A DNA stretch of 63,756 nucleotides, counting the filler, from Octopus bimaculoides (lineage: Eukaryota): NCBI RefSeq assembly GCF_001194135.2. It is 7 parts of 6 records of this genome, joined end to end, with 100 filler letters (N's around TTAATTAATTAA, not from the genome) between each part and the next. Parts side by side here need not be neighbours in the genome. Positions count along the whole stretch, not along the records: positions 8,609 to 31,395 come from NC_068999.1; 6 more parts are not named here. The stretch is one strand, 5' to 3'. Of the stretch, positions 8,609 through 28,699 are shown one piece after another. Position 1 is the stretch's first letter, and each line of letters opens with the position of its first letter. The notes beneath the pieces were generated by a model, which saw only the letters and a list, made by a program, of their open reading frames with translations, was not told the DNA's origin and did no database searches. Made by a program: the position numbers and the translations under genes.

Positions 8609-8617
8609 TATATAATA

Positions 8618-11419
8618 TTAGCTGACGTACCCGGTAATTCCCGGAAAAGCGGGGCTTATCCATTGGTTCCATTCGCATTATTGTTTCGCGAATCCAGTAA
8701 CAACAATACGAAGTTTATAGCATTTAAAACTGTTTTTGAGCATTTACAGAGAATATAGAACCGCCTTACATAGGATCGTGATTTTAGGAAATCCCAATAT
8801 GTTATAAATATCCGAATCGTGAAGTCTGTTACAAAATGACATGAAATTAGTTACCCGATAGTAAGAATTCAAATAAAGTAACCCCGAAAGGGCTTCAATA
8901 CGTTCCCAGGAATTAGGAGGAAATTTGTATCAAAATCGTGAAACATGTTACGTAATAAGAGACTAATCAGATATGAGATAATAACAATTCAAAGTAAGTC
9001 TGAAAAGGAATTTTGTGTATTCCCAGAGAATATAACTCTAAGGGCCCCAGTGTTGAAATAGATTTACAATGAATGTAGAAACGGACTGACATTTAGTTTT
9101 ACAGTAGACATACAAATAAAGTTGCATATAGATTTTAAAATAAAATATGTAGATTATCAATACATCTACAGCACTTACCAATATTACACTTAAATAATAA
9201 ATACCTGATAATTTGGTGAATCTTATTAAGTTTGCACAGCTTCTTGATAAACATTTTGGTCGTTGTTTGTGGGGCATAAAGAAACAAATGATACGGATTG
9301 CCGATTCTTGAGCATGTCACATAAAGTTGGCCATTGGAGAAAACTGGTTCCGCAAGGTTCAGACCTACCACATCTAAGGACTACCCCCGGGCCTTGTTAA
9401 TGCTCATTGCAAAGCTCAGTTTCAACAGGAATTGCAGGCACTTCTACTGGAAAAGCATACCCGAGGTATTAATTGGTATTCTAGGAATGAATACAGGCTC
9501 ACTGTTTGCTTTACCAGTCAAAATTGTTGTCTCCAAGACTGTTGGTATCATCTTTATTATAAGTCGTGTGCCATGGCAAAGCCTTGGTGGTAAGAGGTTT
9601 CGAAGCAGCATAACTGGTGCCCCAATCTTGAGGTGCAAGTTTTGGAGTGGGAGGCCGGGTGGTGGCAGACGATTCAGGAATGTATCTAGATATTTCACAG
9701 CTTTATTGATGTTGAGTACAATGTCAATGGACTTGTAGTTGTGACGCTCACCTGGCCACTGTTCCAGAAGTTTGATGTTCAAATCATCAACTTTCACATT
9801 CTTTGGCGCTAAAATGTCACGGGTTTTTACCCAGTTATGTTCTGTATACTGATGTCTCAAGTTAGGAACCACCTTATTCATGCGTTCCTTTAAATAAGAT
9901 ACCACATGTCCAAAAGCAATCTTACCCAGCCATCCTTCTCGCCACCCGAAGTGCCATTACTGACATCCAACAGTTGCTATGAAAACATATTCCGTCTGTT
10001 ACATTACCATGAGTTGCAGTCGCATGTTGGTTGTGAGGCTCAGCTTTTGCTCACTGCTGCATAGGAAGGACCACAATATGTTGGCTTTTACCTCATCAGT
10101 TCTTGTCCCCTGTGGAACCACAGGAAGGGTTTTTCTAAAGTATCCTGCAATCAAGAGTGTGGCACCTCCCACGGGCCTGGTATTGTGTCTCAGATCCTGA
10201 TAGACCATGTCAAGTGCTTCAAAGGAAATCTTTTTGCTCATCGTCGCTTCATCCCAGATGATCAACCTGCATTCACCCAGAAGTTTGCTTTTATAGAACC
10301 ACGACTGATGTTGCAGTTTGGTTTCTCTTTCGTGGACAGGTCCAAACAGAGTTTGAAAAAGGAAATAGCTGTGGGGCCACCACTTAGAACAGCTGCAGCT
10401 ATTCCACTTGACGTGACGGTTATGGCGCTGTGTTTCCTTTGGTGCAGTTAAGCCAGAAGAACATTGATGACAAATGTCTTGCCAGTTTCACCTGGAGCAT
10501 CCAGAAGGAAAGTCCTCTTCTCTCACTTTCAAAGCTTGAGATAATAGTCTTATAAACAGCCAGTTGGTTCTCCAGTTTGTGTTCGTTATCAGCTATATAC
10601 ACCGTCTTCTTTCGATATCGTAGCTGATTTCTCGCAAGTACTCAATTAGGAGATAGTCTGCCGCATCCTACGGTTGCGTCGGACCAAATGTGGCAAGGCC
10701 TTGACCTCTCTTAGCTTGCACTCCAATGTCTAGGTTAAGTAATGCTTCATTGTAAATGGCGTTATTGAACGTGGCAATTTCCTCTGAGGTTTACCTTTGA
10801 ATCCTTCGTAGGATGCCATCTGCCATGCTGGTTTCTTGGGAGGTTCACCCAAATCACATGTCATCGGCAAACAGATAACCCTGGCATAATTTGAAGAAGG
10901 CTGTCTAAGTGGGTTTTGGTGGTTTCAGAACTACGTTTCGAGCAATGGCTTCTATGATAATATACACGCTGGCCATTTTCAAAATATACAGGTAGATAAA
11001 CCACTGTTGGATATCGCCCGTGGATTTCGAAGCCAAGGATGCGCCACATTGCCTCGTTAGAGGAAATATACCTACCCAACTTATATTGCTGAATTTCGTC
11101 TGCCTGCCTGCCTTCCTGTTCAAGTCGATAAACCCTTATCGATGTATTTACATACATATTTAATAGTTTTTATAGAGATGCGTTACTCAACATTAACATA
11201 GGCCTGCAATGTTTTAGGCAGCAATGAGTTAGAGGGCATTATCCACATGTTATGATTAAAGGAAAATGAATAGGCTATTTCCATTGGCTTTTAAAGCAAA
11301 ATATATGGATGTGGATGCCTTCTAGGGGCACTATCCATCCAATTATAGATTTTTATTACACTTCACTGTGCCTCGTATTAAATTTGGGTGTTACCTTAAC
11401 AAATTTGCAAAATTTCACG
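8618..11419 (-). mobile_element. Helitron (decayed, 5' end lost in gap)
   Basis: Minus-strand 3' terminus: hairpin TCCGG-GAATTA-CCGGG (8630-8645), then 12 nt ending CTAA|T at 8618. RepHel fragments lie upstream. Confidence 0.9.
9135..11235 (-). pseudogene. Helitron Rep/PIF1 helicase pseudogene
   Basis: Rep Y2 motif NVE*..SIKTIKYVCKYIDKG (~11132-11195); DEIQQYKLGRYISSNEAMWRILGF; Walker A LDAPGETGKTF (~10480-10515); IIWDEATMSK; ILAPKN; LHLKIGAPVMLLRNL; VFSNGQLYVTCSR. Many stops and frameshifts. Confidence 0.92.
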
Positions 11420-11784
11420 NNNNNNNNNNNNNNNNNNNNNNNNNNNNNNNNNNNNNNNNNNNNNNNNNNNNNNNNNNNNNNNNNNNNNNNNNNNNNNNNN
11501 NNNNNNNNNNNNNNNNNNNNNNNNNNNNNNNNNNNNNNNNNNNNNNNNNNNNNNNNNNNNNNNNNNNNNNNNNNNNNNNNNNNNNNNNNNNNNNNNNNNN
11601 NNNNNNNNNNNNNNNNNNNNNNNNNNNNNNNNNNNNNNNNNNNNNNNNNNNNNNNNNNNNNNNNNNNNNNNNNNNNNNNNNNNNNNNNNNNNNNNNNNNN
11701 NNNNNNNNNNNNNNNNNNNNNNNNNNNNNNNNNNNNNNNNNNNNNNNNNNNNNNNNNNNNNNNNNNNNNNNNNNNNNNNNNNNN

Positions 11785-13680
11785 GGGGGGGTGCCTCACA
11801 TCTCAAAGATAACATATGGAGATTATCTCCCTTTGTTAATGACTATCGACTTCCGGCTGTGCCACCATCTTTGGCTAGCAGGAACCTCCTGAAATGTAAA
11901 CATGACCCAAGCAAACATGACTCTGTTCTGGAGTTAAAGATGCTCCCGGGTTCAGGTAGTACTTTAAGGATTTTGATGCGTTCAGCTATGCATAACTTGC
12001 ATCCCGTCCTTCCGTTGATGTAGGAGCCTGAATTCTGGAGAATTTTCCATCAGATCGAGTACAGAAAACACATTGTCTCTTAGGTGCGAGATGTGGCTGG
12101 CCAGTGCTGTTACGGATCTCCTTTCAGAGGAACTCCTAAGGAGGACCTGTGGTTGCAGAGACGTTGAACGAGTTACTGGAATATCCAATGAATCTCCGTG
12201 GGTGTGTGTTGTCGGTACTGTACCTGTTAGTGTTGTTGTTGTTGCTGCTGCCACCGATATTGCAGTTGTTGGAGCCGAGGCTGCTGGTGGTAATGGCGTC
12301 CGTAATGGTTAATGGTATCGTCATTGCCGGTTATGTAGGAGGCAATGATGTTGTTATCGTCGTCCTTTTCATTGGTGGGAGAGTTTCCAATGCTGCCAGG
12401 GGTGTCATCAGCTGTGGATCCGCTGGTGTTTCTTTTAGGGCCACCGTCACTGCTACTGCTGTTACTTCCGTTATAACTGCTGGTGGCACTGCGTCTGTTG
12501 CTGCTGCTGCTGCTGCTATAGATGTCAATTGTGGTACATTGGAAATGTTGGCAATGCTGGTGTTGATAGCGATTATGCTGTTCATGTTGTTAGAGTTGTT
12601 GGCGTCGGGGGTAGTACCAATGCTGCAACTGGTGCTATTATTGCTATTGTTGGAAATGTTGTTTACTGCGGTAACGGTCACGTTGTTGCTGCTTCCATTC
12701 TGGTTTCTGCAGGTTCTATTGCTTCTACTCGATGTATTGCTAGCGTTTGCAAAAACTTCGATTTAGAAGCAATAGCAGCCGTAAACGTGAGAACAGAACC
12801 AGCAACACCGCTACCATCGCCACAGATGACAACATGAGCAACAATAGAAATAGCAGCACCAGTGACAGCATCGGCAGTTCCCCCGACGGAGACAACTCTA
12901 ACAATAACAACGACAATAGCATCGCCATTAACACAAGCATTAACAACAGCTGCCATCACATCCATAGAAGCAGACCTGACAAATCCTAAAACAGCAGCAA
13001 CAGTGCTACCACTATCTCTAACGGTAATAACAGCAGAAGTAGTAACAGCAGCCCTAGCCGAAACACCGGCGTAGTAACAACAATGGCAAGTCTCCCACTA
13101 ATGAAGAGGACCACAAGAACAACAGCATTGCCTCCACCATTACCGGCAGTGGAGATGCCATTACGGACGCCACCATCACCTCACCATGACCTCACCAATA
13201 CCTGCAGCTCCAGCTCCAACAACAACAATGACGGCGGTAGCAGCAACAACAACAGGTACAGCATCGGACAACACACGCCCAAGGAGATACATTAGATGCT
13301 GCAGTAACTCGTTCAAGCAAAGTCTCTTCAATTACAGGTCATCCTTAAGAGTTACAGAAAGGAGATACGTAACATCACTGGCCAGCCGCTTCTAGCAGTT
13401 AAGAGATGATAGGTTTCCATACGTAATCTAATAAAAATAAATCCTCGAGAACCGAGAGCCCTACATCAACGGGACGAAGTATTGCAAGTTACGAATAGAT
13501 GAACCAGGGAACATCCTTAACACCAGAACACAGATTTTTCGGACCATTTTTAGATTTAAGGGGATCCCTGCTAGCCTTTTGGAGCCCGCAAGATGGCGCA
13601 CAGCCGGAAGTCGTTATCCACTAGCAAAGGGAGATAATCCCGAAATGTTACCTTTGAGTAGTGAGGCATTTTCCCCAACA
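11785..13680. repeat. ~1.9-kb diverged inverted repeat (foldback palindrome)
   Basis: 11785-12732 is the reverse complement of 12758-13680, at roughly 80% identity in a hand-aligned 70-bp block. Innermost arms CTATTGCTTCTA (12716-27) / TAGAAGCAATAG (12764-75). Right end ...CCCCAACA. Confidence 0.88.
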
Positions 13681-13793: not shown

Positions 13794-13835
<42 letters not shown>

Positions 13836-16707
13836 NNNNNNNNNNTAGCAATGATAACCTCCCAGGGGCAACAAAAATAATCTACCTATCGGGGATAATC
13901 ACTAGAATAAATAAATATTGAAAAATAAATTAATAATTAAATAATTAAATAAATAAATAAATAAATAAATAAAATAAATTAATCTAGTAGAAATTCACAG
14001 GAGAGCAGTAGCAATTGGAAAGATTAAGGAGTTACCTCCCCGGTATATAGTAAACAAAATCGATGAAGGCAGCATGGCGGAGGTATAGTCAAGTATTTTA
14101 ATAATCTGTTATGATCGTTAATTGTGTTAGTTGTGTTTTTTCGTAATTTGTTCTGATGGAAGCCATTCCTGAGGAAGTGCCAAACGTCAGACATCCAACG
14201 GATCAGTCGCTGGATAGAGTTGGGCACAGAAATGTTGACATCGAATGGTAAATAATTAAATAAATGGAATAAAGATCGGTCGTGTTGAGAGTCTCTACAT
14301 TTTAAAACATATATATATATATATATATATTTGTTATGAAGGACACTCAATAAATGATGTACAGTATAGACAGATAGACAGAGCTGGTATGAGCATATGT
14401 CAACCTCCTGCCTTTATACATATATTTTGAAGAAGCATTTCTAAAACAATGTCAACTCTGTTATAAAATCAAGTTGTCCAAATTTTTACATACATATATT
14501 TGACTGACAGGTACAGACTTAAATTGTAAGGTAGGAAAAATCTTTAAACAAGAAGAAATATTTAATTGTAGTTCTCCGAATATGATGTAAAAGAAGACAA
14601 ATTACATAACCGAATGAGAGTGATAAGAAAGAAAATCAATTATGCGAATACTAAAACAATCATTTGATATATACTGCTGTGGGTGAAGGAGTGAAATTAA
14701 ATAATTTTAAAGCATATCAAGATAAAATTCCGATTCCCTTACCGATGAATAGTGAATAATCAAAGACAAAATGAATAAATAATAACCTCGCTTCCACTTT
14801 TGATTATTAATCACTGACAATAATGTAATACTTACAATGAACAGTATGATACAAAGTAAAGATTTGAGAACTGACGTTGTTGTTATAAGATAGTTATGCC
14901 ACCTGTATCCACTACTGTAACTAGAGGGTGTCAGTTTCTCTTTTTTTTAATATATGTAAAAAAGAAGCAATCAACCCACTTTGTATATTTTAGCTTAGCT
15001 ATTTGAATACTGTTAGTAATAAATACGGGATTTTCTTTATATCTAAATAATATACAACCATGATTTCCACCGACTTGTGCATATCATATTCATTGCTATT
15101 ACAAAAGCACAAACAATCATGACGAGGTATACACACCTATATATGAATATTCGTGGTGCATAACATAGACCTATATGAGTATAATATACTTGAAACTAGA
15201 ACATCTCACTGATCTTTGCTTCCCTGTGCTTTCACAGTTTAAATATGTCGTTTAATCTTTTAATCTAATGTTCTTTTTCGTTGTCTTTGATTTTTTCTAT
15301 TGCTTTTCTGGCTTCATTGTGTGCAGTATTCAAATAGATAACTTGTGCTATTTTCTTCTAAAATTATGAATTATGCAATAGGAAGACGCAATCTGATAAT
15401 TCCAAGAGGCCAATCTTAAGTTACCAAGCGATGAACGCTGCTATTCTAATCATTTCATTATTACCACTATCAAAATTCACCGTATCTTTGTCACAATATC
15501 ATTTTCATCATCATCGCCGTCGTCGTCATTCTTATCATAGTAACCGTCAACAATAACATCATTATTATCCTCGTCATTCCAGCAACAATGGAAAATTAAC
15601 TAAAAAGTAGCAGCGACATCGACTGCTATATATATTATAATAAAGTGCTATCTTTTACAACTTACTCATCATCATCATGAACATCGCTTTTATTATCACC
15701 AGTCTTTTTTCATCCTCATAAAATTCGTCATTCTTTCCTCATCTTCATCTGGCTCATCTTTCTTTTTCTCCTATCCAGCCTCTCCATCCCACACTTTATT
15801 TACTCCTCCTTCTTCTCTTTTCCTTCTCATTCTTTCCTTATAATCATCTTCACCATAATCACAGTGATCATATTGGTTAACATCGACGTTCTTATTTTTC
15901 TCAAAGTCAATACAAAGATAACCAGTATCTTTGGGAAGAGACATGCAAACTGGAACGTCGATGAATATGTTCAAGATTTACATAAGGATTTACATCGCCT
16001 TTACCATTTTCATAATAGCCATAACCATCCTCATCTATGTAAACATCGTCATATATTCTTCTTCGCCCTCTCGATCAACACGACCCTCATCACCAGCGTC
16101 GTCTTCATCATCATCTTCATTGTTGTCGTCGTCATCATAATGATGTTAATTGACACTAAAAACAGCATAATCATTAGCATCGTCATCACAACGGTATTTT
16201 TATTGTTATCCACGTCGAATATTCTACGTTCATCAACATTACAACCACTAAATTAATTGGTGATATCCTTATTAACTATCATCATATTTACCTGCGTCTC
16301 ATTGATATACAGTTTATTTTGTGTTCTCTTCTATATGTTGCTTCACTGAACAAATTTGTTAAATCTGATCATGACAAAGGCATCATTGACTCGATGTATA
16401 GTTGTGTTTAGACAAAGTACTATTCTCTCACAATCATGCTCACATTCCCTCCTCAAAATTATTGCATTTGGAGGCGTCTCATTAGGACTGTCATTGTGAA
16501 TGTGATTATATAAATGTGTACGAACGCTAATTTTCTTGGGTATTTTTTAGAGTAATACATATTTTGTGTCCCGCTAAATCTCCCTAAGAACCACGTTCAG
16601 TGTTCGCGTGTATATGGATTGCCCAAACAGTTGCACGTTAATTTCCTGTCCAGTCTGTTCCATTAACCTGATCAACTGGAACACTCGTTGTCGTAAACGA
16701 CAGAGTA

Positions 16708-16742
<35 letters not shown>

Positions 16743-16747
<5 letters not shown>

Positions 16748-17345
16748 GGTTCATATCTAGTTGTGTATTTATAGAAAATCCATATTTATGTATATGAATA
16801 TCGTCATGAATATTTGTCGTGATGCAAGGACTGTTAAATCATAAAATAGACTGATTAAATATATTCCTATATTTACAAGCCTGATCATTAACACTTTAAA
16901 AAATATATAAAATATAATAAAAACAAGAACAAAATTCAAATAGATAATAGAAATTAAATAAACAAAACAATTACACGGTCAGAAAATGTTCTTATGCATC
17001 TTTAATAATATTCATCTAACGATATTTTAATCACTACCCATTATTATTATATAAAATTTATATAATAAAATTTATATAATATCTTAAATATTTATGATGT
17101 TGTAAGAAATATATAGTTTTTAAATTTCTATATACTATTTTGAAAGAATAAATAAGGATCTATTTTATTCACACACGAAAGTCATTCAAAAAGTTTTAAT
17201 CAACGATTCATTAATTCAAAGTTTCTTCTAAATACGCTGTAATTAAAGAAATGTATGAATTTACGATTATTATAATCTATACTATTTCTTACATAAAAAA
17301 ATGGTAATAATATATAAGTAAATAACTTAGAATTTTACAGAAGAA
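16743..17345 (-). repeat. Downstream direct repeat (3' end/pLTR) of Penelope-like element
   Basis: Colinear with 20195-20850, e.g. ATGCAAGGACTG(T/C)TAAATC(A/G)TAAAATAGACTGA and AACGATTCATTAATTCAAA in both. Ends in (TA)n. Confidence 0.85.
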
Positions 17346-19900
17346 AATTAATCAGAGCAAGCCAATAGTTTAATATCTCCATAATTTTTGTGCATATAAG
17401 TTCAAGAGAACATAGTATCAATATATATATTAAATATTATAGGGTGTGCAAGAAATATTCATTTATACATAACTATTCAAAATTATATATAATTATCTTG
17501 AAGAATGATTCTTATCCATTTATGCGTACTAATATAAATATTATTCTCATAGCTTCCATATAGCTTCCAGATAAACTTCCTTAAACTGGTAATGTTCAAC
17601 CTCTCTCTTTTCGTAAAAGGATGTTCCTGGTTTGCAACGAGCCTTTTAATAAAAAATCTTCAGTTGACCCAATGGAAAAATAATGTTTCCCTTCAGATTC
17701 AATTCTACATCTACATACAGTGTTATTTTGCATACAAAAATTATTGAAATAACATTTATCCTTAAATGTACAATCACAAGCTCTAGCGAGATAATTACCA
17801 GTACTAAAACTATTATTATTTCTATTATTAGAAGAATTGTCTACTTTTCGTAATTAATTGAAGAGATAATTCTAAACAAATCTTTAGATAGTGAAAAGCC
17901 AATTCTAACATTTTATTATTAATTATTTTAGTATATTTATTTTCTTTACTAAAATGTTTACTGATCTGTAAAAAAAGCTTAACCAAATTAGATTATATTT
18001 GTCTTACATAAGGAAAAAATAAACCAAATATTATTTCCATTATAGAATTAACAGTATTAATAAAACCGGCATATGGGGTGTACGTTTTAGTCTTAAACTT
18101 AAGCCTATTTTCATACAGAATATTATAATTACTGCACTTCTTATTTATACTACATCTCTTATTATTACTATTCTTCTTCTTATTGTTAACCTCAATATTA
18201 TAATCGTAATGCAGGTTTAGTGTATCTATATTTTTGGTATTGATTTTAGAATATACGTTTACACTGTATTTTGTTCCACTTTTAATTTGGTTAACTTTCG
18301 ATTCTGTAATGGTTAATTTACTAATTACCTCATCAACCTTTTTACTATTTATATTTTTATGAGATTTAAGAATTTTAATTTTATTACTCGCATCACTACT
18401 ATTAGATCAACACATTCTGTTGTCTACCGATTTACCATTATCATAATAATATTTTTATAGCCTTCATTTTTATATTATAATAAACAATCCTATGCATATA
18501 TTCCACTCTTTTAAGGTCCACATTATAATATTCTGCATTATTGTTAAATATTCCACATTAGAAGATAAATATGAAACTCGCTTGGAAATATTTTCAACTA
18601 AAGTTCATGTAATTGCTTTAGGATGATTACTATTAAAGTTAATATATTTAAAAGTATTTCTTGGTTTATGATATGAGCCATATTGACCAGGAACAAGATT
18701 GGGATTAACATCTAAATAATTAACAAGATTTATGTTCAGTTTCAACAGAAATTAATAAACTAAATCTTTTAAGAAAACTATGCATATTTTTCTTATACAA
18801 AACTAAGTTCCTAGTTGATAGAATATTAGTAAAAACAGTTATTCATCTGTATACAGTCCGCCTTTAATATCTGGAAATTTAACACTAACATGAAATATAA
18901 TGTATATACCTACAGGATCAGTAACTTGGGCAAAATCAGCTGATCCCATAGAAAAGTCAAAAAATTATTAGTATAATTTTTAGACCAGTACTTATTATCA
19001 AATAATATAATGAATTTTCGAGCTTCCAAAATTACTTTCTTTAAAACTAAGGTTGGAGCATTTTCTAGCAAATAGATGAGCATTATTAAGTGCAACAGGA
19101 TTAATAGAAGAATAATAGATATTAATACCAGTTTGCATACATTTACTTCTTTTTCTTCTATTTTCTATGAAACCAATAAGCAGCTTCTTGCGTATTAGAC
19201 CAAATTTGAAGTGTTATATTTTGCTGACGTCTAGGTATATGCCTATGTAGAATAATCTGACTTAAGATATCCGGATCGGCCTGGGCAATTTAATCAAACT
19301 TTAGGGTCAGAAAAGAAGTTTCCTTTATGACCTTTTTAAGTTGTTCTATGCCTCATAAACACAAACGACTCTGTTCTATCATCAAGATCATAATCATTCA
19401 GAATTTTGTTAACTTCTAAATTAATGGACGCTAAAACATGTTTACTTACTACTTGTAATACTAGTATTCTCTTCCTGCATTCATGATATTTTAATAAATC
19501 CATATCACACAAGTTTCCGGTTTTATAAAATTGCACAGTAATTCCATTTTTGCAAGATCACATAGTAAAGACTTTAGCTTCTTTAAATGTTCATTTAACC
19601 TAAAGGGATATTTAAAAAATTTAGTATATTTGATTATGTTTCATCAGTTATTTTCAAAAGCCGTCAAGTGGTGGTTTGGTGGTGGAAATGTTTTAGTCTT
19701 AAATTATTTTTAAAACATTTAATATCTCATTAACAGGGTTAATTTCTCGCTCAAAATGTTTATCAGGGTAAATAGCCTTCTAAGAGAACCTATGGATGAA
19801 TTCAAGAGTTTTATTAATTAGGTCCTTCATGAGATCTTTTCTAGGTGGAATAAGATTTTTTTAAAAATATAAGTCAATTGGTGCTTTCTTCATTTATACC
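17330..19900 (-). pseudogene. Penelope-like element RT + GIY-YIG endonuclease pseudogene (Neptune-type)
   Basis: Minus-strand fragments: ILEARKFIILFDNKYW, FDFSMGSADFAQVTDPVGIYII (cf. FDVTMGS.DGAE.CELVGLY), GGLYTDE (cf. GLYRDD), NYLDVN, YHKPRNTFKYINFNSNHP, CDCTFKDKCYFNNFC...YFSIGSTEDF, TSLRKFIWKL. Confidence 0.88.
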
Positions 19901-20194
19901 AGCGAAAAAGAAAAGCAGTACTTAAGTAATATACAAATATGTTATTATCATTCAAGTCAAAAAAAAAAAATACAATTTCCTTTCAAGGGATGGAAAACAT
20001 CCAATTTCAATTCACTCTTCAGTCAATTTCCACAATACAGTAGAGAAAAAATCAGAAATTAAAATGTTATAATTTCAAAATATGCATATTAAAGAAAATA
20101 GAGGAATACTATTGACAGATTATAAACTTACTAATATTATAATATAATATAAGTATCCTATAAAATAATATAATTTAACAAATGATTAGAAAAT

Positions 20195-20850
20195 ATATAT
20201 AATCTACAATTTGCTTCGATACATATCAACTAGTGCATTTATTAAAAAATCACATTTATGTATATGACTCTCATCAGGGTAATATTTGTCTCAAAAATAT
20301 ATAAAAATGCTATGCAAGGACTGCTAAATCGTAAAATAGACTGACAAAAAATATTCCTATGTTTACAACCGTGGGTGTTGATAATTTTAAAATTTCATAA
20401 ATATAATAAAAACAAACTAAAATTCTAATTGATAAAATAAATTAAATAAACAAAATTACAACGGATATAAAATAATCTTATACATCTTTAATAATAGCAA
20501 TATAACGATATTTTGATCTAAAATAATCACTGCCAATTTTTATTACATAAAATCTAATATAATAAATAATTTATAGTATGTTAAATATTTATGGTGTAGT
20601 AAGAAATATATATTTTTTAAATTTCTGTTTACTATTATGAAAGAATAAATAAGGACCTAATTTATACAGATACAAAATACATTAAAAATCTTGTAATAAA
20701 CGATTCATTAATTCAAACATTTCTTCGAAATACGCTGAGGTTAAACAAATATATAAGTTACGATTATTATAACCTATACTATTTCTTACATAAAAATGGT
20801 AATAATATATAAGTAAATAACTTATCAGAATCTTATTTAATTTTACAGAA
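20195..20850 (-). repeat. Upstream direct repeat (pLTR) of Penelope-like element, with hammerhead-like motif
   Basis: Paralogue of 16743-17345. Contains CTGATGA at 20277-20271 (minus strand). Confidence 0.8.
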
Positions 20851-20864
20851 GAACATAACCCCTG

Positions 20865-21240
20865 TAAGTCAGTTGCTGTGTGGTAAGCAGCTCGCTTAAC
20901 AACCACATGGTTCCGGGTTCAGTCCCACTGCGTGGTAACTCAAGCGACTGTCTTCTACTGTAGCTGCGTGCGGACCAAATCGTTGTGAGTGGATTTGGTA
21001 GACCGAAACTTAAAGAAACCTGCCGGTTATATATACATATATATGTATGCATGTGTTTGTGTTTGTCACCGAACCACCGCTTGAGATCCGATTTTTTTGT
21101 GTTTATTTCCCAGTAACTTAGCGGTTTGGCAAATAACACTGATAGAGTAAGTACTAGACTAACAATAAATAAGTTATGGGTGTCTATGTGTTCCACAAAA
21201 GGTGGTGCTCCAGCAAATAAAAGAAAAAAAAGAATAAAAG
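20865..21240 (+). mobile_element. SINE family B, near full length
   Basis: GCTGTGTGGTAAGCAGCTCGCTTAACAACCACATGGTTCCGGGTTCAGTCCCACTGCG ... GTAACTTAGCGGTTTGGCAAA ... GGTGCTCCAGC. Confidence 0.8.
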
Positions 21241-24200
21241 AATTGCTTACAAGAAATAACCGGAAATATGTACTTACAATAGAAATGTTTTTAATCATGA
21301 TAGTGCCTTTTATAAAATTGTTTATATGACGTTCGTATTCAGTGGTTTTAGATGTACCCATTTGTGTGAGATCATCGAGAATATGGATATCTGTAAGATA
21401 ACATGTACATAGATTTCAGTGTCCAAAACAAATTTGGTTAACTTACACGCCCCCGGCCTACAATGCGACCACTCCGTCGGTAGTACTTTCAAATAATGTC
21501 AAAGATTATCTTTTATTAGGATTTATAGATCTTAAATAACCTTATTGTCCGAACAGACAAATATAAGTGTATATATATCTCAGGAAATCAGCTGGACCAA
21601 GTAAACGTAAAAAAAATTAAATTTCTGAAAATAAGTTTATACAATGCAGGAATAAAATGACACAGATTGTAACAAAAAAATATCACACATACATACATGC
21701 ACGCACGCACGCNNNNNNNNNNNNNNNNNNNNNNNNNNNNNNNNNNNNNNNNNNNNNNNNNNNNNNNNNNNNNNNNNNNNNNNNNNNNNNNNNNNNNNNN
21801 NATATATATATATATATATATATACATACATATACACACCGTCACATATTTATGCATAAATCTATAAACATAATTATGTGTGTATTTATATGTATGTCTA
21901 TCGATCTATCACCCTATACATCTGTCTAACTATCTCTCTCTCCATATATATATATATATATCATTGATAAACCTGTGTAATGAGAGTCAAACAACGAGAC
22001 GTAATTTTCAAATGAAAAATGGTGTACGAACCTCTACCACATTAATAGCAAAAACATAAAGCAAGGAATGAATGCAATTAGGTAATAAAGCAAATAACAT
22101 TAATATAGTAAAAACATACTGTATAAATTTCAATAAGACCAGCGTTGAGTTTTATCTTTATTTTTTTTTCTCTCTCCTGATATCAAAACAGATTTATTCA
22201 TTGTAGGTAATTCAACGGTCTTATTTCTTAGTGTGTCAAACACAGTCGAAATCTTGGCAACAATTAAAGTGATTGTATGTGAAAACAGCTCTATTTCACT
22301 TTTGACGCTCTCTCGAATATTTTAACAAGTACAATTTTCACCAAGGCACTAAATTAAACTATCCATTTTAGCTGTCATGTCTCAAACTATTCTTCTTTTA
22401 ATCGTTGCTGTCTCTTTTTAATACATCAATCAAAAATAAGCTTATACATTTTATCATGTTTTTTTTTCCTGTATAACTCTTTTTATTTGGATGGCGAGTA
22501 TTCATATTTTTATTTTTGCTAACATCATAATCATTTTTAACATCATCATTACTATCATCATACTCATCATTAATGGCATTGTAATTATATACAGAATGTA
22601 TTATTGTTGTTGTTGTCGTTGTTGATTATGATTTTGTTGTTGTTATTGATATTAATATTAGCATCATCATGATTGCTGTCTGCATTTATTTTATTTTCTA
22701 TGATGTATTTGCTCAAACAATTATTATGACTTTTATTTCCATTCTCTCTCTTATGTTGTTTTTGTCGTTGCTGTCGTTTTCTTTCTTGTTTTGTTTTATT
22801 TTCTTGTTGTTTGTATTGGCAGTATTTCAGAACAAGTTATGACAGACTTATTTTCGTTAGTTTTGATTTGCTGTTCAGGATTTTACAACCTTCATTGATT
22901 AAATAACACGAGGTTTTTTCTCAAACAGCAGATGTGCTTTCCTGTTGTAAGTTGGTTAAAAGTTAATATTTGTGATTCTCGTATTAATTTGTTGCAATAT
23001 ATTTTTACGCTGTCATTTTCAAATCTCTTTACTCAGAAATGCATTTGTTTCAGACGGACAACGTTCCAAAGGCATATTTCTTATTTTATTTGTCTGAAAT
23101 GAGGATATTAACAAATGAACGTGAGTCTGATTATTCTAGATTGTTCTAAAGGAAAAAAAATCATTAATAGTGGTTTCTTCCAACGAAATGGGGCTCTGGT
23201 ATAGAGATTAACGTGTGCTGTATGTAAAGAGGTTAATATGAACATACTGCATGCAATAACCTTTCGTTATATTCAGGACAGAGAAGTGCATATTGCTCCG
23301 TGGACTACTATATTGGAAAAATCATCAAGCTTCATATTAGAGAGGTGAATTTATTTTGGCAGCTATTTCTGGGATGCTAGACTTGATTGAGTCTATATGT
23401 CTGATGCTCATTTTTGTGTAATGAGTATGGTCACTAAGACACGAGTAAGACAACGTGAAAATGAGATGCGGAGAATAGCCTGTGTTATATATTGATTCTC
23501 GATATGTATTATCTAATTAGTCATAAAATGACATAGTTCCACTAAACAGATAATTGAAAAATATTATTTTATCTACCGTTTTACTGATTGTAGCAGTGAA
23601 TCTTCCGTTTGAAATTACTTCATACTCAACACAATTTTTGATATTATCCCCTTGAATTCAGTTGCGGCTTTGTTGAAAAATGTTTTCTGAGAAAAGATTA
23701 ATAAATCTTCTAGTAATGCCATTTAATATCCTCCTAGAATAAAAGAAGACGGTTCAGTATGTGCATATATACTGATGTAACTATGGGTTTTCTATGGAAG
23801 TAACATCTGCGTGTCTTTAAATCAAATGTAATGTTAAAATGTTGGTGAGCGGTAGTTTCTAATCTCACGTCAGAAGACTCCTATTATGATCTATATTTTA
23901 TACATAACATTTAATGTAATATTCTTGAGACTGCCACACCATTGTCTATGTACTGGCCTGCAATGTAGAGATCCGATTACCCCCAATATTCTTACCATTA
24001 TCAATCTGAAAATATTTACAAGGTAAGCGGAAAAGACATGTCAACTGTGGGAGTCAATGAGTGAGACATATTTCCTTAGGCCATGTAGGAATGCATATAC
24101 AAAAAATATTCATTTATGCTCCTGACTATTAGTGACACCAAATTTTGTGTTGCTGGCATTGCAAGCTTTAAAATTTCCTGTAACAAATACAACGATGTTA

Positions 24201-27200: not shown

Positions 27201-28117
27201 TTCATTATACGACTGAGCCACGCATTTAAAATCAGTAGTCATAGTTTGTGTATTATAATGACGAAAGTATTTACTGTTACAAGTTCAAGAATATTTATTT
27301 AAAATCATTTGGAATAAAGCAGTGTGTATTGTCTGGTGTCACCTCATTTATATATTTGATTAATGACTCTGATGAAACGTAATTCATATCAAAGATAATG
27401 GAGTTGTACATCATATTTTCTGTTTCAGTGTTTTCAAAAGTATAATTGTAATACGATTAAATAATATTGATAATAAATTAAATATAATTAACTGAATTAC
27501 TTTCATCCTTTCTGTGTCTACATTTCTCACGTACTTTAGCAAGTTAAATGAGTGGAAATGACTTTAAAATTATTATAGAATACTAAACTTTAAAACTATC
27601 AGAAATATCTTCAACTATTCCTTTTACTTCGTTTGTTTTTACGATATTTTATTTCGGTTTGATGTCTATGTTAACTTATGCGTTATGAAAGTAAGAGTTG
27701 TATGTAATAAAACTTTGGTTTGTGACAATTTTGACAAATACTATTCAAAGAGTGAATATTAATTTTTGATGGAATTGTTAAACTTGACATAAATGCGATT
27801 TTCTAAATATGTCTCAATCAAAACTTAGCTGTCTTCAAACTTCACGAGGATTAATAATTAAATCACAGTTTTTCCTATAAAAAGTTATTACTTTAGAAAA
27901 TAAATATGTGTATTGTTTGTTAAAACATTTGACATATGAAATTCGGAAGTTTTATATTAGTTCATGTTCCGGTAAACAAATATAATAAACCCAAATGTAT
28001 TCAAAGATGAGATAGCAAATTTCTTTACCTCAAGTAATTCACTTATATAAAACTGATCTTAGCTGTAGGTATTGTTATTATTAATGAATAAATTAAACTC
28101 AACTCAAAAATATCATA

Positions 28118-28198
28118 ATGAGTGTAATAATAATTATTATTATAATTATAACAACTACATCATCAACAACAACAACAACAACAATAATAACGATGATG

Positions 28199-28271
<73 letters not shown>

Positions 28272-28354
28272 TAATAATAATAATAATAACAATAATAATT
28301 TCAACTACATCATGGACAACAACAACAACAACAGCAACAACAAGAATAACAATG

Positions 28355-28426
<72 letters not shown>

Positions 28427-28430
28427 TCTC
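28118..28430. repeat. (AAT)n/(AAC)n microsatellite
   Basis: Direct reading. Confidence 0.95.
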
Positions 28431-28581
28431 TTATAGGCACAAAGATTGGGTAGTAAATTACATCCTTCTCAATGATTCACGGTAAAATTAATGAAATGAC
28501 GCTAAGCATTTTATTATACGCGCTAACAATTCTGCCAAATCGTTGCCAGTCATCCATTTTTATTTATATTATTATTATTAC

Positions 28582-28616
<35 letters not shown>

Positions 28617-28699
28617 TTAAGCAATACGCATACGTACAGGAATTTCACCGTGAGGAAAATGCATACTGGATTATGTGTTGCCTTCAAACACAAGGAACG

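What the first reader, a model, noticed from the sequence alone, without database searches (positions are those of the whole stretch)
11785..13680. Unexplained ~1.9-kb foldback palindrome with paralogous Thr/Ala-rich reading frames pointing outward from its centre
Seen: the two ~0.93-kb arms are reverse complements around a spacer of only ~25-36 nt (12728-12763). They are about 80% identical in a hand-aligned block. Both arms carry the same low-complexity peptides read outward (AL(K/A)ETPA, MKRTT(I/R)TT(S/A)LPP). The intact right end is TGTT...AACA-type; the left end runs into a gap. No transposase, RT or integrase motif is visible. Inference: a non-autonomous long-TIR/foldback element (TGT-ended, as in Ginger-like elements) or a snap-back duplication of an LTR-like fragment. 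Any read-through transcript would fold into a ~0.9-kb dsRNA, a potential ADAR or endo-siRNA substrate in a lineage known for heavy A-to-I editing.
Basis: partly seen in the sequence, partly recalled or inferred. Interest (0 to 1): 0.7.

Follow-up and report, generated by a model that had tools for sequence, protein, structure and literature searches.

The report
Decayed non-coding palindrome in octopus DNA
This is a real but old, mutation-worn 1.9-kb inverted duplication of non-coding, repeat-like DNA in the Octopus bimaculoides genome; its "reading frames" are by-products of a triplet-rich tract, and such inverted repeats are an ordinary feature of this genome.

Summary
The palindrome is real. 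Arms 11785-12727 and 12764-13680 align as reverse complements over about 1000 columns, with 80% identity in ungapped columns. The alignment score is 454, against 23±2.4 for shuffles. The asymmetric centre is 20-36 nt.

The piece is Octopus bimaculoides DNA. Each arm has an outer ~430-bp non-repetitive part and an inner ~520-bp degenerate triplet tract. The triplet tract produces the Thr/Ala/Asn/Ser-rich outward ORFs.

The ORFs are not genes:
- Only 13 of 47 indels are multiples of 3.
- Substitutions fall evenly on all three codon phases.
- dN/dS is 0.64-1.15, depending on phase.
- The right arm has stop codons.
- No Pfam hit and no homologue was found in 5.8 billion proteins.

The claimed "intact TGTT…AACA end" is not established, because homology stops exactly where the left arm meets an assembly gap. 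There is no hammerhead, tRNA, reverse transcriptase or transposase. The neighbouring decayed Helitron helicase is a separate element.

I read the feature as a single-event snap-back duplication of a GC-richer, probably mobile-element-derived fragment, now decaying neutrally. Whether it belongs to a dispersed foldback family could not be tested, because no octopus genome search was available.

A read-through RNA would fold into a long, interrupted hairpin (helices ≤21 bp). That would be a plausible ADAR substrate, but this is generic for octopus. Interest is low.

The parts
11420..11784 (.). Assembly gap (365 N) that cuts off the outer end of the left arm.
   Evidence: Comparison with four Helitron-family copies puts that element's end about 60-90 bp inside the gap. 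About 275-300 bp of unknown sequence therefore remains in which the arm could continue.
11785..12727 (+). Left arm of the palindrome (aligned 11792-12742).
   Evidence: 80% identity to the reverse complement of the right arm; score 454 vs 23±2.4 for shuffles.
11785..12210 (+). Outer, non-repetitive part of the left arm (46.7% G+C, no period-3 signal). It contains the best-conserved block, 11792-11871 (86%).
12211..12727 (+). Inner degenerate triplet tract of the left arm. It reads (TGN)n on the + strand and (NCA)n outward. Period-3 signal-to-noise is 13.7.
   Evidence: TRF finds no tandem array there.
12728..12763 (.). Asymmetric centre or spacer. It contains the small palindromes GCTAGC and TTTGCAAA, and the symmetry axis lies at about 12745/12746.
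   Evidence: (I1).
12764..13680 (+). Right arm of the palindrome (aligned 12749-13668).
12764..13255 (+). Inner degenerate (NCA)n triplet tract of the right arm. Period-3 signal-to-noise is 19.5.
13256..13680 (+). Outer, non-repetitive part of the right arm (44.5% G+C).
12331..12681 (-). 116-aa outward ORF of the left arm (T19, A18, N14, S11, P11). A by-product of the triplet tract, not a gene.
   Evidence: No homologue, not on record, dN/dS 0.64 in this phase.
12862..13295 (+). Two 70-aa outward ORFs of the right arm (12862-13074 and 13083-13295). They are in different frames and are separated by stop codons.
   Evidence: The left arm reads the same two peptide motifs in a single frame, so the frame is not conserved between the arms.
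11849..11871 (-). ACTTCCGG … CCATCTT, conserved in both arms. It resembles ETS-like and YY1-like motifs. This is a lead from my own knowledge and was not tested.
   Evidence: Read directly.
13580..13601 (+). AAGATGGCG … CCGGAAGT, the right-arm counterpart of the same motif pair.
   Evidence: Read directly.

Best explanation
What it is: one block of about 0.95 kb of G+C-richer, non-coding, repeat-like DNA is present twice, head to head, around a 20-36-nt asymmetric centre. Each copy has an outer ~430-bp non-repetitive part and an inner ~520-bp degenerate (NCA)n triplet tract.

How I think it arose: the two arms formed together in one event. Either a DNA strand folded back on itself, or a polymerase switched template at the centre (snap-back or fold-back duplication). 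This happened during or after the arrival of a probably mobile-element-derived fragment. Both arms have since decayed neutrally.

The outward Thr/Ala-rich 'reading frames' are side-effects of the triplet tract, not genes. Nothing in the sequence points to a function.

If a polymerase reads through, the RNA would fold into a long, frequently interrupted hairpin. ADAR hyper-edits this kind of substrate in octopus, but it is one of very many such loci.

Shown: the palindrome, its divergence, the absence of coding constraint, the in-silico fold, and independence from the neighbouring Helitron fragment.

Inferred: single-event origin, neutral decay, mobile-element ancestry, and any transcription or editing.
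For: - Collinear reverse-complement alignment covers the whole of both arms, through both the unique part and the triplet tract, and the inner ends meet within 36 nt or less.
- Identity is even along the arm, 75-86% per 100 columns.
- K2P distance is 0.23, and transitions to transversions are 86:85.
- There are 47 indels, of which 13 are multiples of 3, close to the one-third expected by chance.
- Substitutions are spread evenly over the codon phases (0.21, 0.24, 0.19), and dN/dS is 1.15, 0.84 and 0.64 in the three phases.
- The two peptide motifs lie in one frame in the left arm but in two frames, separated by stops, in the right arm.
- The arms have no Pfam domain.
- The 116-aa and 90-aa ORFs have no homologue among 5.8 billion proteins or 1.84 billion representatives. 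That collection does hold Octopus gene models.
- No Rfam family (including hammerhead) and no tRNA.
- The arms are a G+C island of 45-49% in flanks of 29-32%.
- No other copy was found in the 22.8-kb piece or in 84 kb of Octopus DNA from three species.
- The whole palindrome lies inside one gap-free contig block. The longest perfect reverse-complement run between the arms is 16 nt, so the assembler had no repeat-induced ambiguity between them.
- RNA fold: MFE is -975 kcal/mol on the + strand and -1019 on the - strand, against -551 and -557 for shuffles (z about -38). There are 693-708 base pairs across the centre, and the longest helices are 17-21 bp.
Against: - Copy number in the genome could not be measured, because no tool searches a cephalopod genome. 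A dispersed family is therefore not excluded.
- The compositional foreignness of the block, the FB-like layout (unique outer part, simple-sequence inner part), and arm divergence similar to that between copies of neighbouring repeat families (about 18-24%) would all fit a transposable-element family equally well.
- The outer end of the left arm is lost in the gap, so termini and target-site duplications cannot be examined.
- There is no outgroup or orthologous locus to date the event.
- The negative protein searches are weak evidence for low copy number, because non-coding repeats are rarely called as genes.
Confidence: 0.55

Rival explanations
1. It is one copy of a dispersed, non-autonomous foldback or long-TIR transposable-element family. 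The ~0.95-kb arms are the element's terminal inverted repeats, and an unlinked transposase would mobilise it.
For: - A discrete G+C-rich block sits in AT-rich flanks.
- The arm layout, with a unique outer part and a simple-sequence inner part reaching an almost empty centre, resembles Drosophila FB elements (my knowledge).
- The surroundings are full of old repeats of similar divergence.
- The right arm stops near …CCCCAACA.
Against: - No second copy in the piece or in 84 kb of Octopus DNA. This is weak evidence.
- No tandem sub-repeats in the arms by TRF or self-BLAST.
- The termini and target-site duplication cannot be seen, because the homology end coincides with the gap edge.
- No transposase domain within about 8 kb to the right.
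- No ORF-derived relatives in the protein collections.
Confidence: 0.3
2. Two separate copies of one interspersed repeat (for example solo LTRs or truncated retroelement ends) happened to insert head to head. The 'centre' would then be two abutting element termini.
For: - The arms differ by about 20%, as unrelated copies of other families here do.
- Nested and adjacent repeats are common in this piece.
Against: - It requires both copies to end at the same internal position within 36 nt or less, and both to have the same extent as far as can be seen.
- The centre has no TG…CA, poly(A) or microsatellite tail.
- No RT, integrase or hammerhead lies nearby.
Confidence: 0.08
3. It is an assembly artefact: a chimeric join of two unlinked copies, or a hairpin contig.
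For: - The draft assembly has many gaps, one of them directly at the left arm.
- Other copies of the neighbouring Helitron family also break into gaps at the equivalent place in this assembly.
Against: - Hairpin artefacts give identical arms, whereas these differ by 20% and 47 indels.
- The centre and both arms lie in one uninterrupted contig block, 11785-13835.
- The arms share no exact reverse-complement run longer than 16 nt, so k-mer paths are not ambiguous between them.
Confidence: 0.04
4. It is functional. Either it is a pair of divergently oriented paralogous genes for Thr/Ala-rich (mucin-like) proteins, or it is a hairpin-RNA locus that makes small RNAs against a parental gene.
For: - Outward ORFs of 70-116 aa with shared motifs.
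- Strong period-3 signal in the inner arm halves.
- A very stable predicted hairpin.
Against: - The frame is not conserved between the arms, and the right arm has stops.
- Indels are not in threes.
- There is no codon-phase bias, and dN/dS is 0.64-1.15.
- No homologue, and so no candidate parental gene among the Octopus proteins held in the database.
- Perfect duplex runs are at most 16-21 bp.
- Dicer processing of long dsRNA was reported as elusive in molluscs (PMC12479628).
Confidence: 0.03

Closest known systems
Foldback (FB) elements of Drosophila and other long-TIR non-autonomous DNA transposons (e.g. Galileo). This comparison rests on my own knowledge.
   Same: Very long inverted arms with little or no middle. 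The outer part is unique and the inner part is made of simple or repetitive sequence. The element has no coding capacity of its own.
   Different: No tandem sub-repeat arrays were detected. No second copy, shared termini or target-site duplication could be shown. The arms are 20% diverged, so if it ever was such an element it has long been dead.
Small-scale fold-back or snap-back inverted duplications, made by intrastrand annealing at a break or by replication template switching. This is a general mechanism known from yeast, human and cancer genomes (my own knowledge).
   Same: Two inverted copies of one segment joined through a short asymmetric spacer of tens of nucleotides. The arms are coextensive and evenly diverged.
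   Different: The original junction microhomology is no longer recognisable after about 0.23 substitutions per site. One outer breakpoint is hidden in the gap, so the original copy cannot be told from the duplicate.
Inverted-repeat dsRNA substrates of ADAR hyper-editing in animals, including O. bimaculoides (Porath et al. 2017, PMC5625713).
   Same: A reverse-oriented similar sequence lies within 2 kb at 65% identity or more. That is the criterion the paper used for structures around hyper-edited clusters. The predicted hairpin is strong.
   Different: It does not meet that paper's 'long, nearly perfect' criterion of more than 95% identity over at least 40 bp, because perfect runs are at most 16-21 bp. 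Neither transcription nor editing was shown here.
Hairpin-RNA (hpRNA) endo-siRNA loci of Drosophila (my own knowledge).
   Same: A long inverted repeat with a short loop, and arms that look coding-derived (triplet periodicity).
   Different: No parental gene was found. The duplex is heavily interrupted. There are no small-RNA data, and Dicer products of long dsRNA were reported as elusive in molluscs.
Ginger-type DNA transposons, and solo-LTR or Penelope-like pseudo-LTR pairs.
   Same: Only the …AACA at the right limit of homology. Penelope-like elements can also carry inverted terminal repeats (my knowledge).
   Different: The terminus is not established, because the homology end is the gap edge. 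There is no integrase, RT or GIY-YIG domain, no hammerhead ribozyme, and no TG…CA at the inner ends.

Membership tests
Foldback (FB-type) / long-TIR non-autonomous DNA transposon | Long terminal inverted repeats with little or no central region. | tested here: met
   Arms of at least 940 bp around a centre of 36 nt or less.
Foldback (FB-type) / long-TIR non-autonomous DNA transposon | Arms built, at least in their inner part, of tandem sub-repeats. | tested here: inconclusive
   TRF and self-BLAST find no tandem array. The inner ~520 bp is nevertheless a strongly period-3, cryptically simple tract (signal-to-noise 14-20).
Foldback (FB-type) / long-TIR non-autonomous DNA transposon | Multiple dispersed copies sharing the same termini. 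| not testable with these tools
   No cephalopod genome can be searched by DNA. There were zero copies in the 22.8-kb piece and in 84 kb of Octopus loci, which says little.
Foldback (FB-type) / long-TIR non-autonomous DNA transposon | A target-site duplication flanking the element. | not testable with these tools
   The left terminus lies in the N gap 11420-11784.
Ginger-like DNA transposon | TGT…ACA termini with a short target-site duplication. | tested here: inconclusive
   The right limit reads …CCCCAACA, but it is defined by where the left arm hits the gap.
Ginger-like DNA transposon | An integrase-like transposase (in autonomous copies). | tested here: not met
   No Pfam domain in the six frames of the arms or in stop-free segments 14027-21415.
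LTR retrotransposon / solo LTR pair | Each repeat unit bounded by TG…CA, with PBS/PPT or gag-pol remnants next to it. | tested here: not met
   The inner ends at the centre lack CA/TG boundaries. No tRNA-like or RT, RNase H or integrase signal.
Penelope-like element with inverted pseudo-LTRs | A hammerhead ribozyme motif in the repeats, and an RT/GIY-YIG ORF. | tested here: not met
   No Rfam hammerhead at E ≤ 1 and no RT/GIY-YIG domain.
Helitron (the neighbouring element) | The sequence is part of the element as defined by its other copies. | tested here: not met
   Four copies (L001-L004) share an end about 60-90 bp beyond window 11419. None carries arm-like sequence.
Protein-coding paralogue pair | A conserved reading frame, purifying selection and homologues. 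| tested here: not met
   Frameshifts and stops between the arms. Only 13 of 47 indels are in threes. dN/dS is 0.64-1.15 with no phase bias. Zero homologues.
ADAR hyper-editing substrate (inverted-repeat dsRNA) | A reverse-oriented similar sequence (≥65% identity) within ±2 kb. | tested here: met
   80% identity over about 940 bp. Predicted hairpin z is about -38. The criterion is from PMC5625713.
ADAR hyper-editing substrate (inverted-repeat dsRNA) | The locus is transcribed across both arms, and A-to-G clusters appear in RNA reads. | not testable with these tools
   No RNA-seq data are accessible.
hpRNA / endo-siRNA locus | A near-perfect long duplex, small RNAs of about 21-22 nt, and a homologous target gene. 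| tested here: not met
   The longest perfect runs are 16-21 bp, and no parental gene was found. Small RNAs could not be tested.

The most novel reading that the evidence does not exclude
The locus is a relic of an undescribed cephalopod foldback-type transposon family. Its arms combine a promoter-like outer part (conserved ETS-like and YY1-like motifs) with an expandable triplet tract. Its self-complementary transcripts would add to the unusually large pool of hyper-edited dsRNA in octopus.
Probability: 0.2. Interest if true: 0.4.

Novelty: new member of a known kind. Interest (0 to 1): 0.18.

Why it matters
It matters little on its own. It is one more old inverted repeat in a genome already known for an exceptionally high density of them. 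It shows no sign of coding or RNA-level selection.

It would gain some interest only if a genome-wide search showed a whole family of such self-folding elements. That family would then be a defined source of ADAR substrates in cephalopods.

The practical lesson for the scan: long ORFs with shared peptides inside triplet-periodic tracts are not evidence of genes. An element "end" that coincides with an assembly gap on the partner arm is not an end.

Tried and rejected
1. Protein identity of the arms. Pfam on all six frames gave nothing. The 116-aa and 90-aa ORFs had no hit in the 5.8-billion-protein index. The 116-aa ORF had no hit in the 1.84-billion representative library. I rejected a coding reading.
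2. An independent copy of the locus. Exact look-ups of four arm ORFs, three of which cross or touch the centre, and of the local gene model P0001 all returned 'not on record'. I therefore obtained no independent assembly of the centre and no orthologous locus.
3. Structured RNAs. Rfam at E ≤ 1 found no hammerhead or any other family in the arms. The only hits were microRNA models on (TA)n microsatellites elsewhere, far below their gathering scores. ARAGORN found no tRNA.
4. A link to the neighbouring Helitron. I fetched four related copies from three Octopus species. They share an end just inside the gap, and none has arm-like sequence. I rejected the link.
5. An autonomous partner nearby. Pfam on stop-free segments of at least 45 aa in 14027-21415 gave nothing. 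A segment that looked to me like a Penelope-type motif (18608-18751, minus strand) was not confirmed.
6. Continuation of the palindrome beyond the gap. The right flank does not pair with the sequence left of the gap (score 27, against a shuffle maximum of 28).
7. An RNA-structure or editing footprint in the arm differences. G:U-compatible changes number 33 on one strand and 53 on the other, and transitions to transversions are 1:1. There is no convincing signal.
8. Literature. I found no described cephalopod foldback family.

Full report
**Observation.** The sequence between the N gap at 11420-11784 and about 13680 is a palindrome.
- Ungapped repeat finding gives several collinear inverted pairs. 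They include 12580-12727/12764-12911 with 36 nt between them, and 11792-11862/13598-13668 at 85%.
- A gapped local alignment of the left arm against the reverse complement of the right arm runs 11792-12742 vs 13668-12749. It has 1001 columns, 692 matches and 138 gap columns. Identity is 80% over ungapped columns and 69% overall.
- The score of 454 compares with 23.1 ± 2.4 (maximum 34) for 100 shuffles, and with 19 for the non-complemented orientation.

The observation therefore stands.

**One part does not stand: the 'intact TGTT…AACA right end'.** The alignment continues to the very first base after the gap (GGGGGGGTGCCTCAC against GGGGAAAATGCCTCAC). The outer limit of homology is imposed by the gap in the left arm. 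A fall in G+C after about 13700 is only a soft hint that the right arm ends near there. Termini and target-site duplications cannot be assessed.

**Source and surroundings.** A helicase ORF to the left of the gap has its best matches in Octopus bimaculoides, O. sinensis and O. vulgaris. One match is a 99% identical gene model, so the piece is O. bimaculoides DNA.
- Region 8615-11419 on the minus strand is a frameshifted PIF1-type (Helitron-type) helicase fragment (PF05970, PF21530).
- I fetched four related copies: L001 and L002 from O. bimaculoides, L003 from O. sinensis, and L004 from O. vulgaris. They are about 77-82% identical to it.
- These copies share a common end about 60-90 bp beyond the point that matches window 11419, which falls inside the gap.
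- None has arm-like sequence, even with sensitive settings.

The palindrome is therefore a separate entity next to that element. At most about 275-300 bp of unknown sequence lies in between.

To the right, stop-free segments of at least 45 aa in 14027-21415 have no Pfam match.

**Anatomy of the arms.** Each arm has two parts.
- The outer ~430 bp is non-repetitive and has no triplet periodicity.
- The inner ~520 bp has a very strong period-3 signal. Signal-to-noise is 13.7 and 19.5, against 3.7 for the decayed helicase and 0.5 for a control.
- TRF and self-BLAST find no tandem array in the arms.

Read outward, the inner tract is a degenerate (NCA)n. That is why every outward frame is rich in Thr, Ala, Ser, Asn or Pro, and why ORFs are long.

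The arms are a G+C island of 45-49% in flanks of 29-32%. The best-conserved block (86%) is at the outer end. It carries CCGGAAGT and AAGATGG motifs in both arms. From my own knowledge these resemble ETS and YY1 sites. This is a lead, not a test.

**Are the reading frames genes? No.**
- Of the 47 indels between the arms, only 13 are multiples of three.
- The two shared peptide motifs lie in one frame in the left arm. In the right arm they lie in two frames separated by stop codons.
- Substitutions fall evenly on the three codon phases (0.21, 0.24, 0.19).
- dN/dS is 1.15, 0.84 and 0.64 in the three phases. The value of 0.64 belongs to the phase of the 116-aa ORF.
- There is no Pfam domain in any frame.
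- The 116-aa and 90-aa ORFs have no homologue in an index of 5.8 billion proteins that does contain Octopus gene models. The 116-aa ORF also has none in an exhaustive HMMER search of 1.84 billion representatives.

**Other identities tested.**
- There is no Rfam family in the arms, and in particular no hammerhead, which argues against Penelope-type pseudo-LTRs. There is no tRNA.
- There is no RT, integrase or transposase in the arms or in the ~8 kb scanned to their right.
- The arm has no further copy in the piece.
- I found no published cephalopod foldback family.

**Artefact?** This is unlikely. Hairpin contigs have identical arms, whereas these differ by 20% and 47 indels. The palindrome and its centre lie in one uninterrupted contig block. 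The longest exact reverse-complement run shared by the arms is 16 nt, so the arms cannot have been confused with each other during assembly. I could not obtain an independent assembly of the centre.

**RNA folding.** A transcript of 11785-13680 has a predicted MFE of -975 kcal/mol (+ strand) or -1019 (- strand), against -551 and -557 for shuffles (z about -38). There are 693-708 pairs across the centre, but the helices are interrupted every 21 bp or less.
- The locus meets the ≥65%-identity criterion that Porath et al. used for structures around hyper-edited clusters.
- It does not meet their 'nearly perfect' criterion of more than 95% over 40 bp.
- The same paper reports that O. bimaculoides has an exceptionally high fraction of loci with a nearby inverted match (PMC5625713). 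The potential is real but generic.
- A mollusc small-RNA survey that included O. bimaculoides found Dicer processing of long dsRNA elusive (PMC12479628). That argues against the endo-siRNA idea.
- The differences between the arms show no editing-like or structure-preserving bias. Transitions to transversions are 86:85, and G:U-compatible changes are 33 vs 53.

**Explanation.** The arms are coextensive and evenly diverged, and they meet at an almost empty, asymmetric centre. That pattern fits one event that created both copies. The event could be a fold-back or template-switch (snap-back) duplication of a G+C-richer, probably mobile-element-derived fragment. Neutral decay followed, to K2P 0.23.

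I give this reading about 0.55. The main rival, at about 0.3, is that the whole structure is one dead copy of a dispersed foldback or long-TIR family. The block's compositional foreignness and its layout (unique outer part, simple-sequence inner part) fit that rival too. Only a genome-wide DNA search can decide, and none was available here.

The remaining rivals are minor: two independent head-to-head insertions (0.08), mis-assembly (0.04), and a functional coding or hpRNA locus (0.03).

**Verdict.** This is a confirmed but ordinary structural relic. It is a new instance of a known kind, a degenerate long inverted repeat in a repeat-rich cephalopod genome, and its interest is low.

Noticed in passing
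window 8615-11419 (minus strand): A decayed, frameshifted Helitron-type PIF1 helicase fragment (PF05970, PF21530). An old gene model (P0001) matches it at 99% identity. Copies about 77-82% identical exist in O. bimaculoides, O. sinensis and O. vulgaris. All share the same upstream end, and no Rep domain is in view.
   Followed up: yes
window 11420-11784; L001 6963-7641: In the O. bimaculoides assembly, both this Helitron-family copy and copy L001 run into an assembly gap within about 0-75 bp of the same point of the element. The long-read assemblies (L003, L004) have no gap there. Something just beyond the element's end may be hard to assemble from short reads.
   Followed up: partly
window 16721-17329 and 20193-20824: A pair of direct repeats of about 610-630 bp, 78.5% identical and about 3.47 kb apart, with no duplication of the sequence between them. 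It is either LTR-like or two same-orientation copies of one repeat. The interval has no Pfam domain. Divergence is similar to that of the palindrome arms.
   Followed up: partly
window 20871-21215: An interspersed repeat of about 345 bp, with several copies (67-82% identical) in loci from all three Octopus species. One copy sits directly next to the Helitron-family end in O. sinensis (L003 8675-8832). It has no tRNA or Rfam match. The long ORF 20843-21361(-) that overlaps it is probably spurious.
   Followed up: partly
window 28085-28453, 28556-28619 and 22599-22695: A long (AAT/AAC)n triplet array of about 99 copies, and complementary (CAT/ATT)n tracts. These produce many low-complexity inverted and direct 'repeats', and long poly-Asn and poly-Ile ORFs.
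   Followed up: no
window 13794-13835, 16711-16743, 21802-21834: (TA)n microsatellites. Two of them sit directly at assembly gaps. They are the source of the weak microRNA-model hits in Rfam (mir-3149, mir-297 and others, far below gathering scores), which are spurious.
   Followed up: yes
window 11785-13680 vs 13846-16700: CpG observed/expected is 0.66 in the palindrome arms and 0.62 in the Helitron fragment, but 0.93 in the AT-rich right flank. I have no interpretation for this.
   Followed up: no
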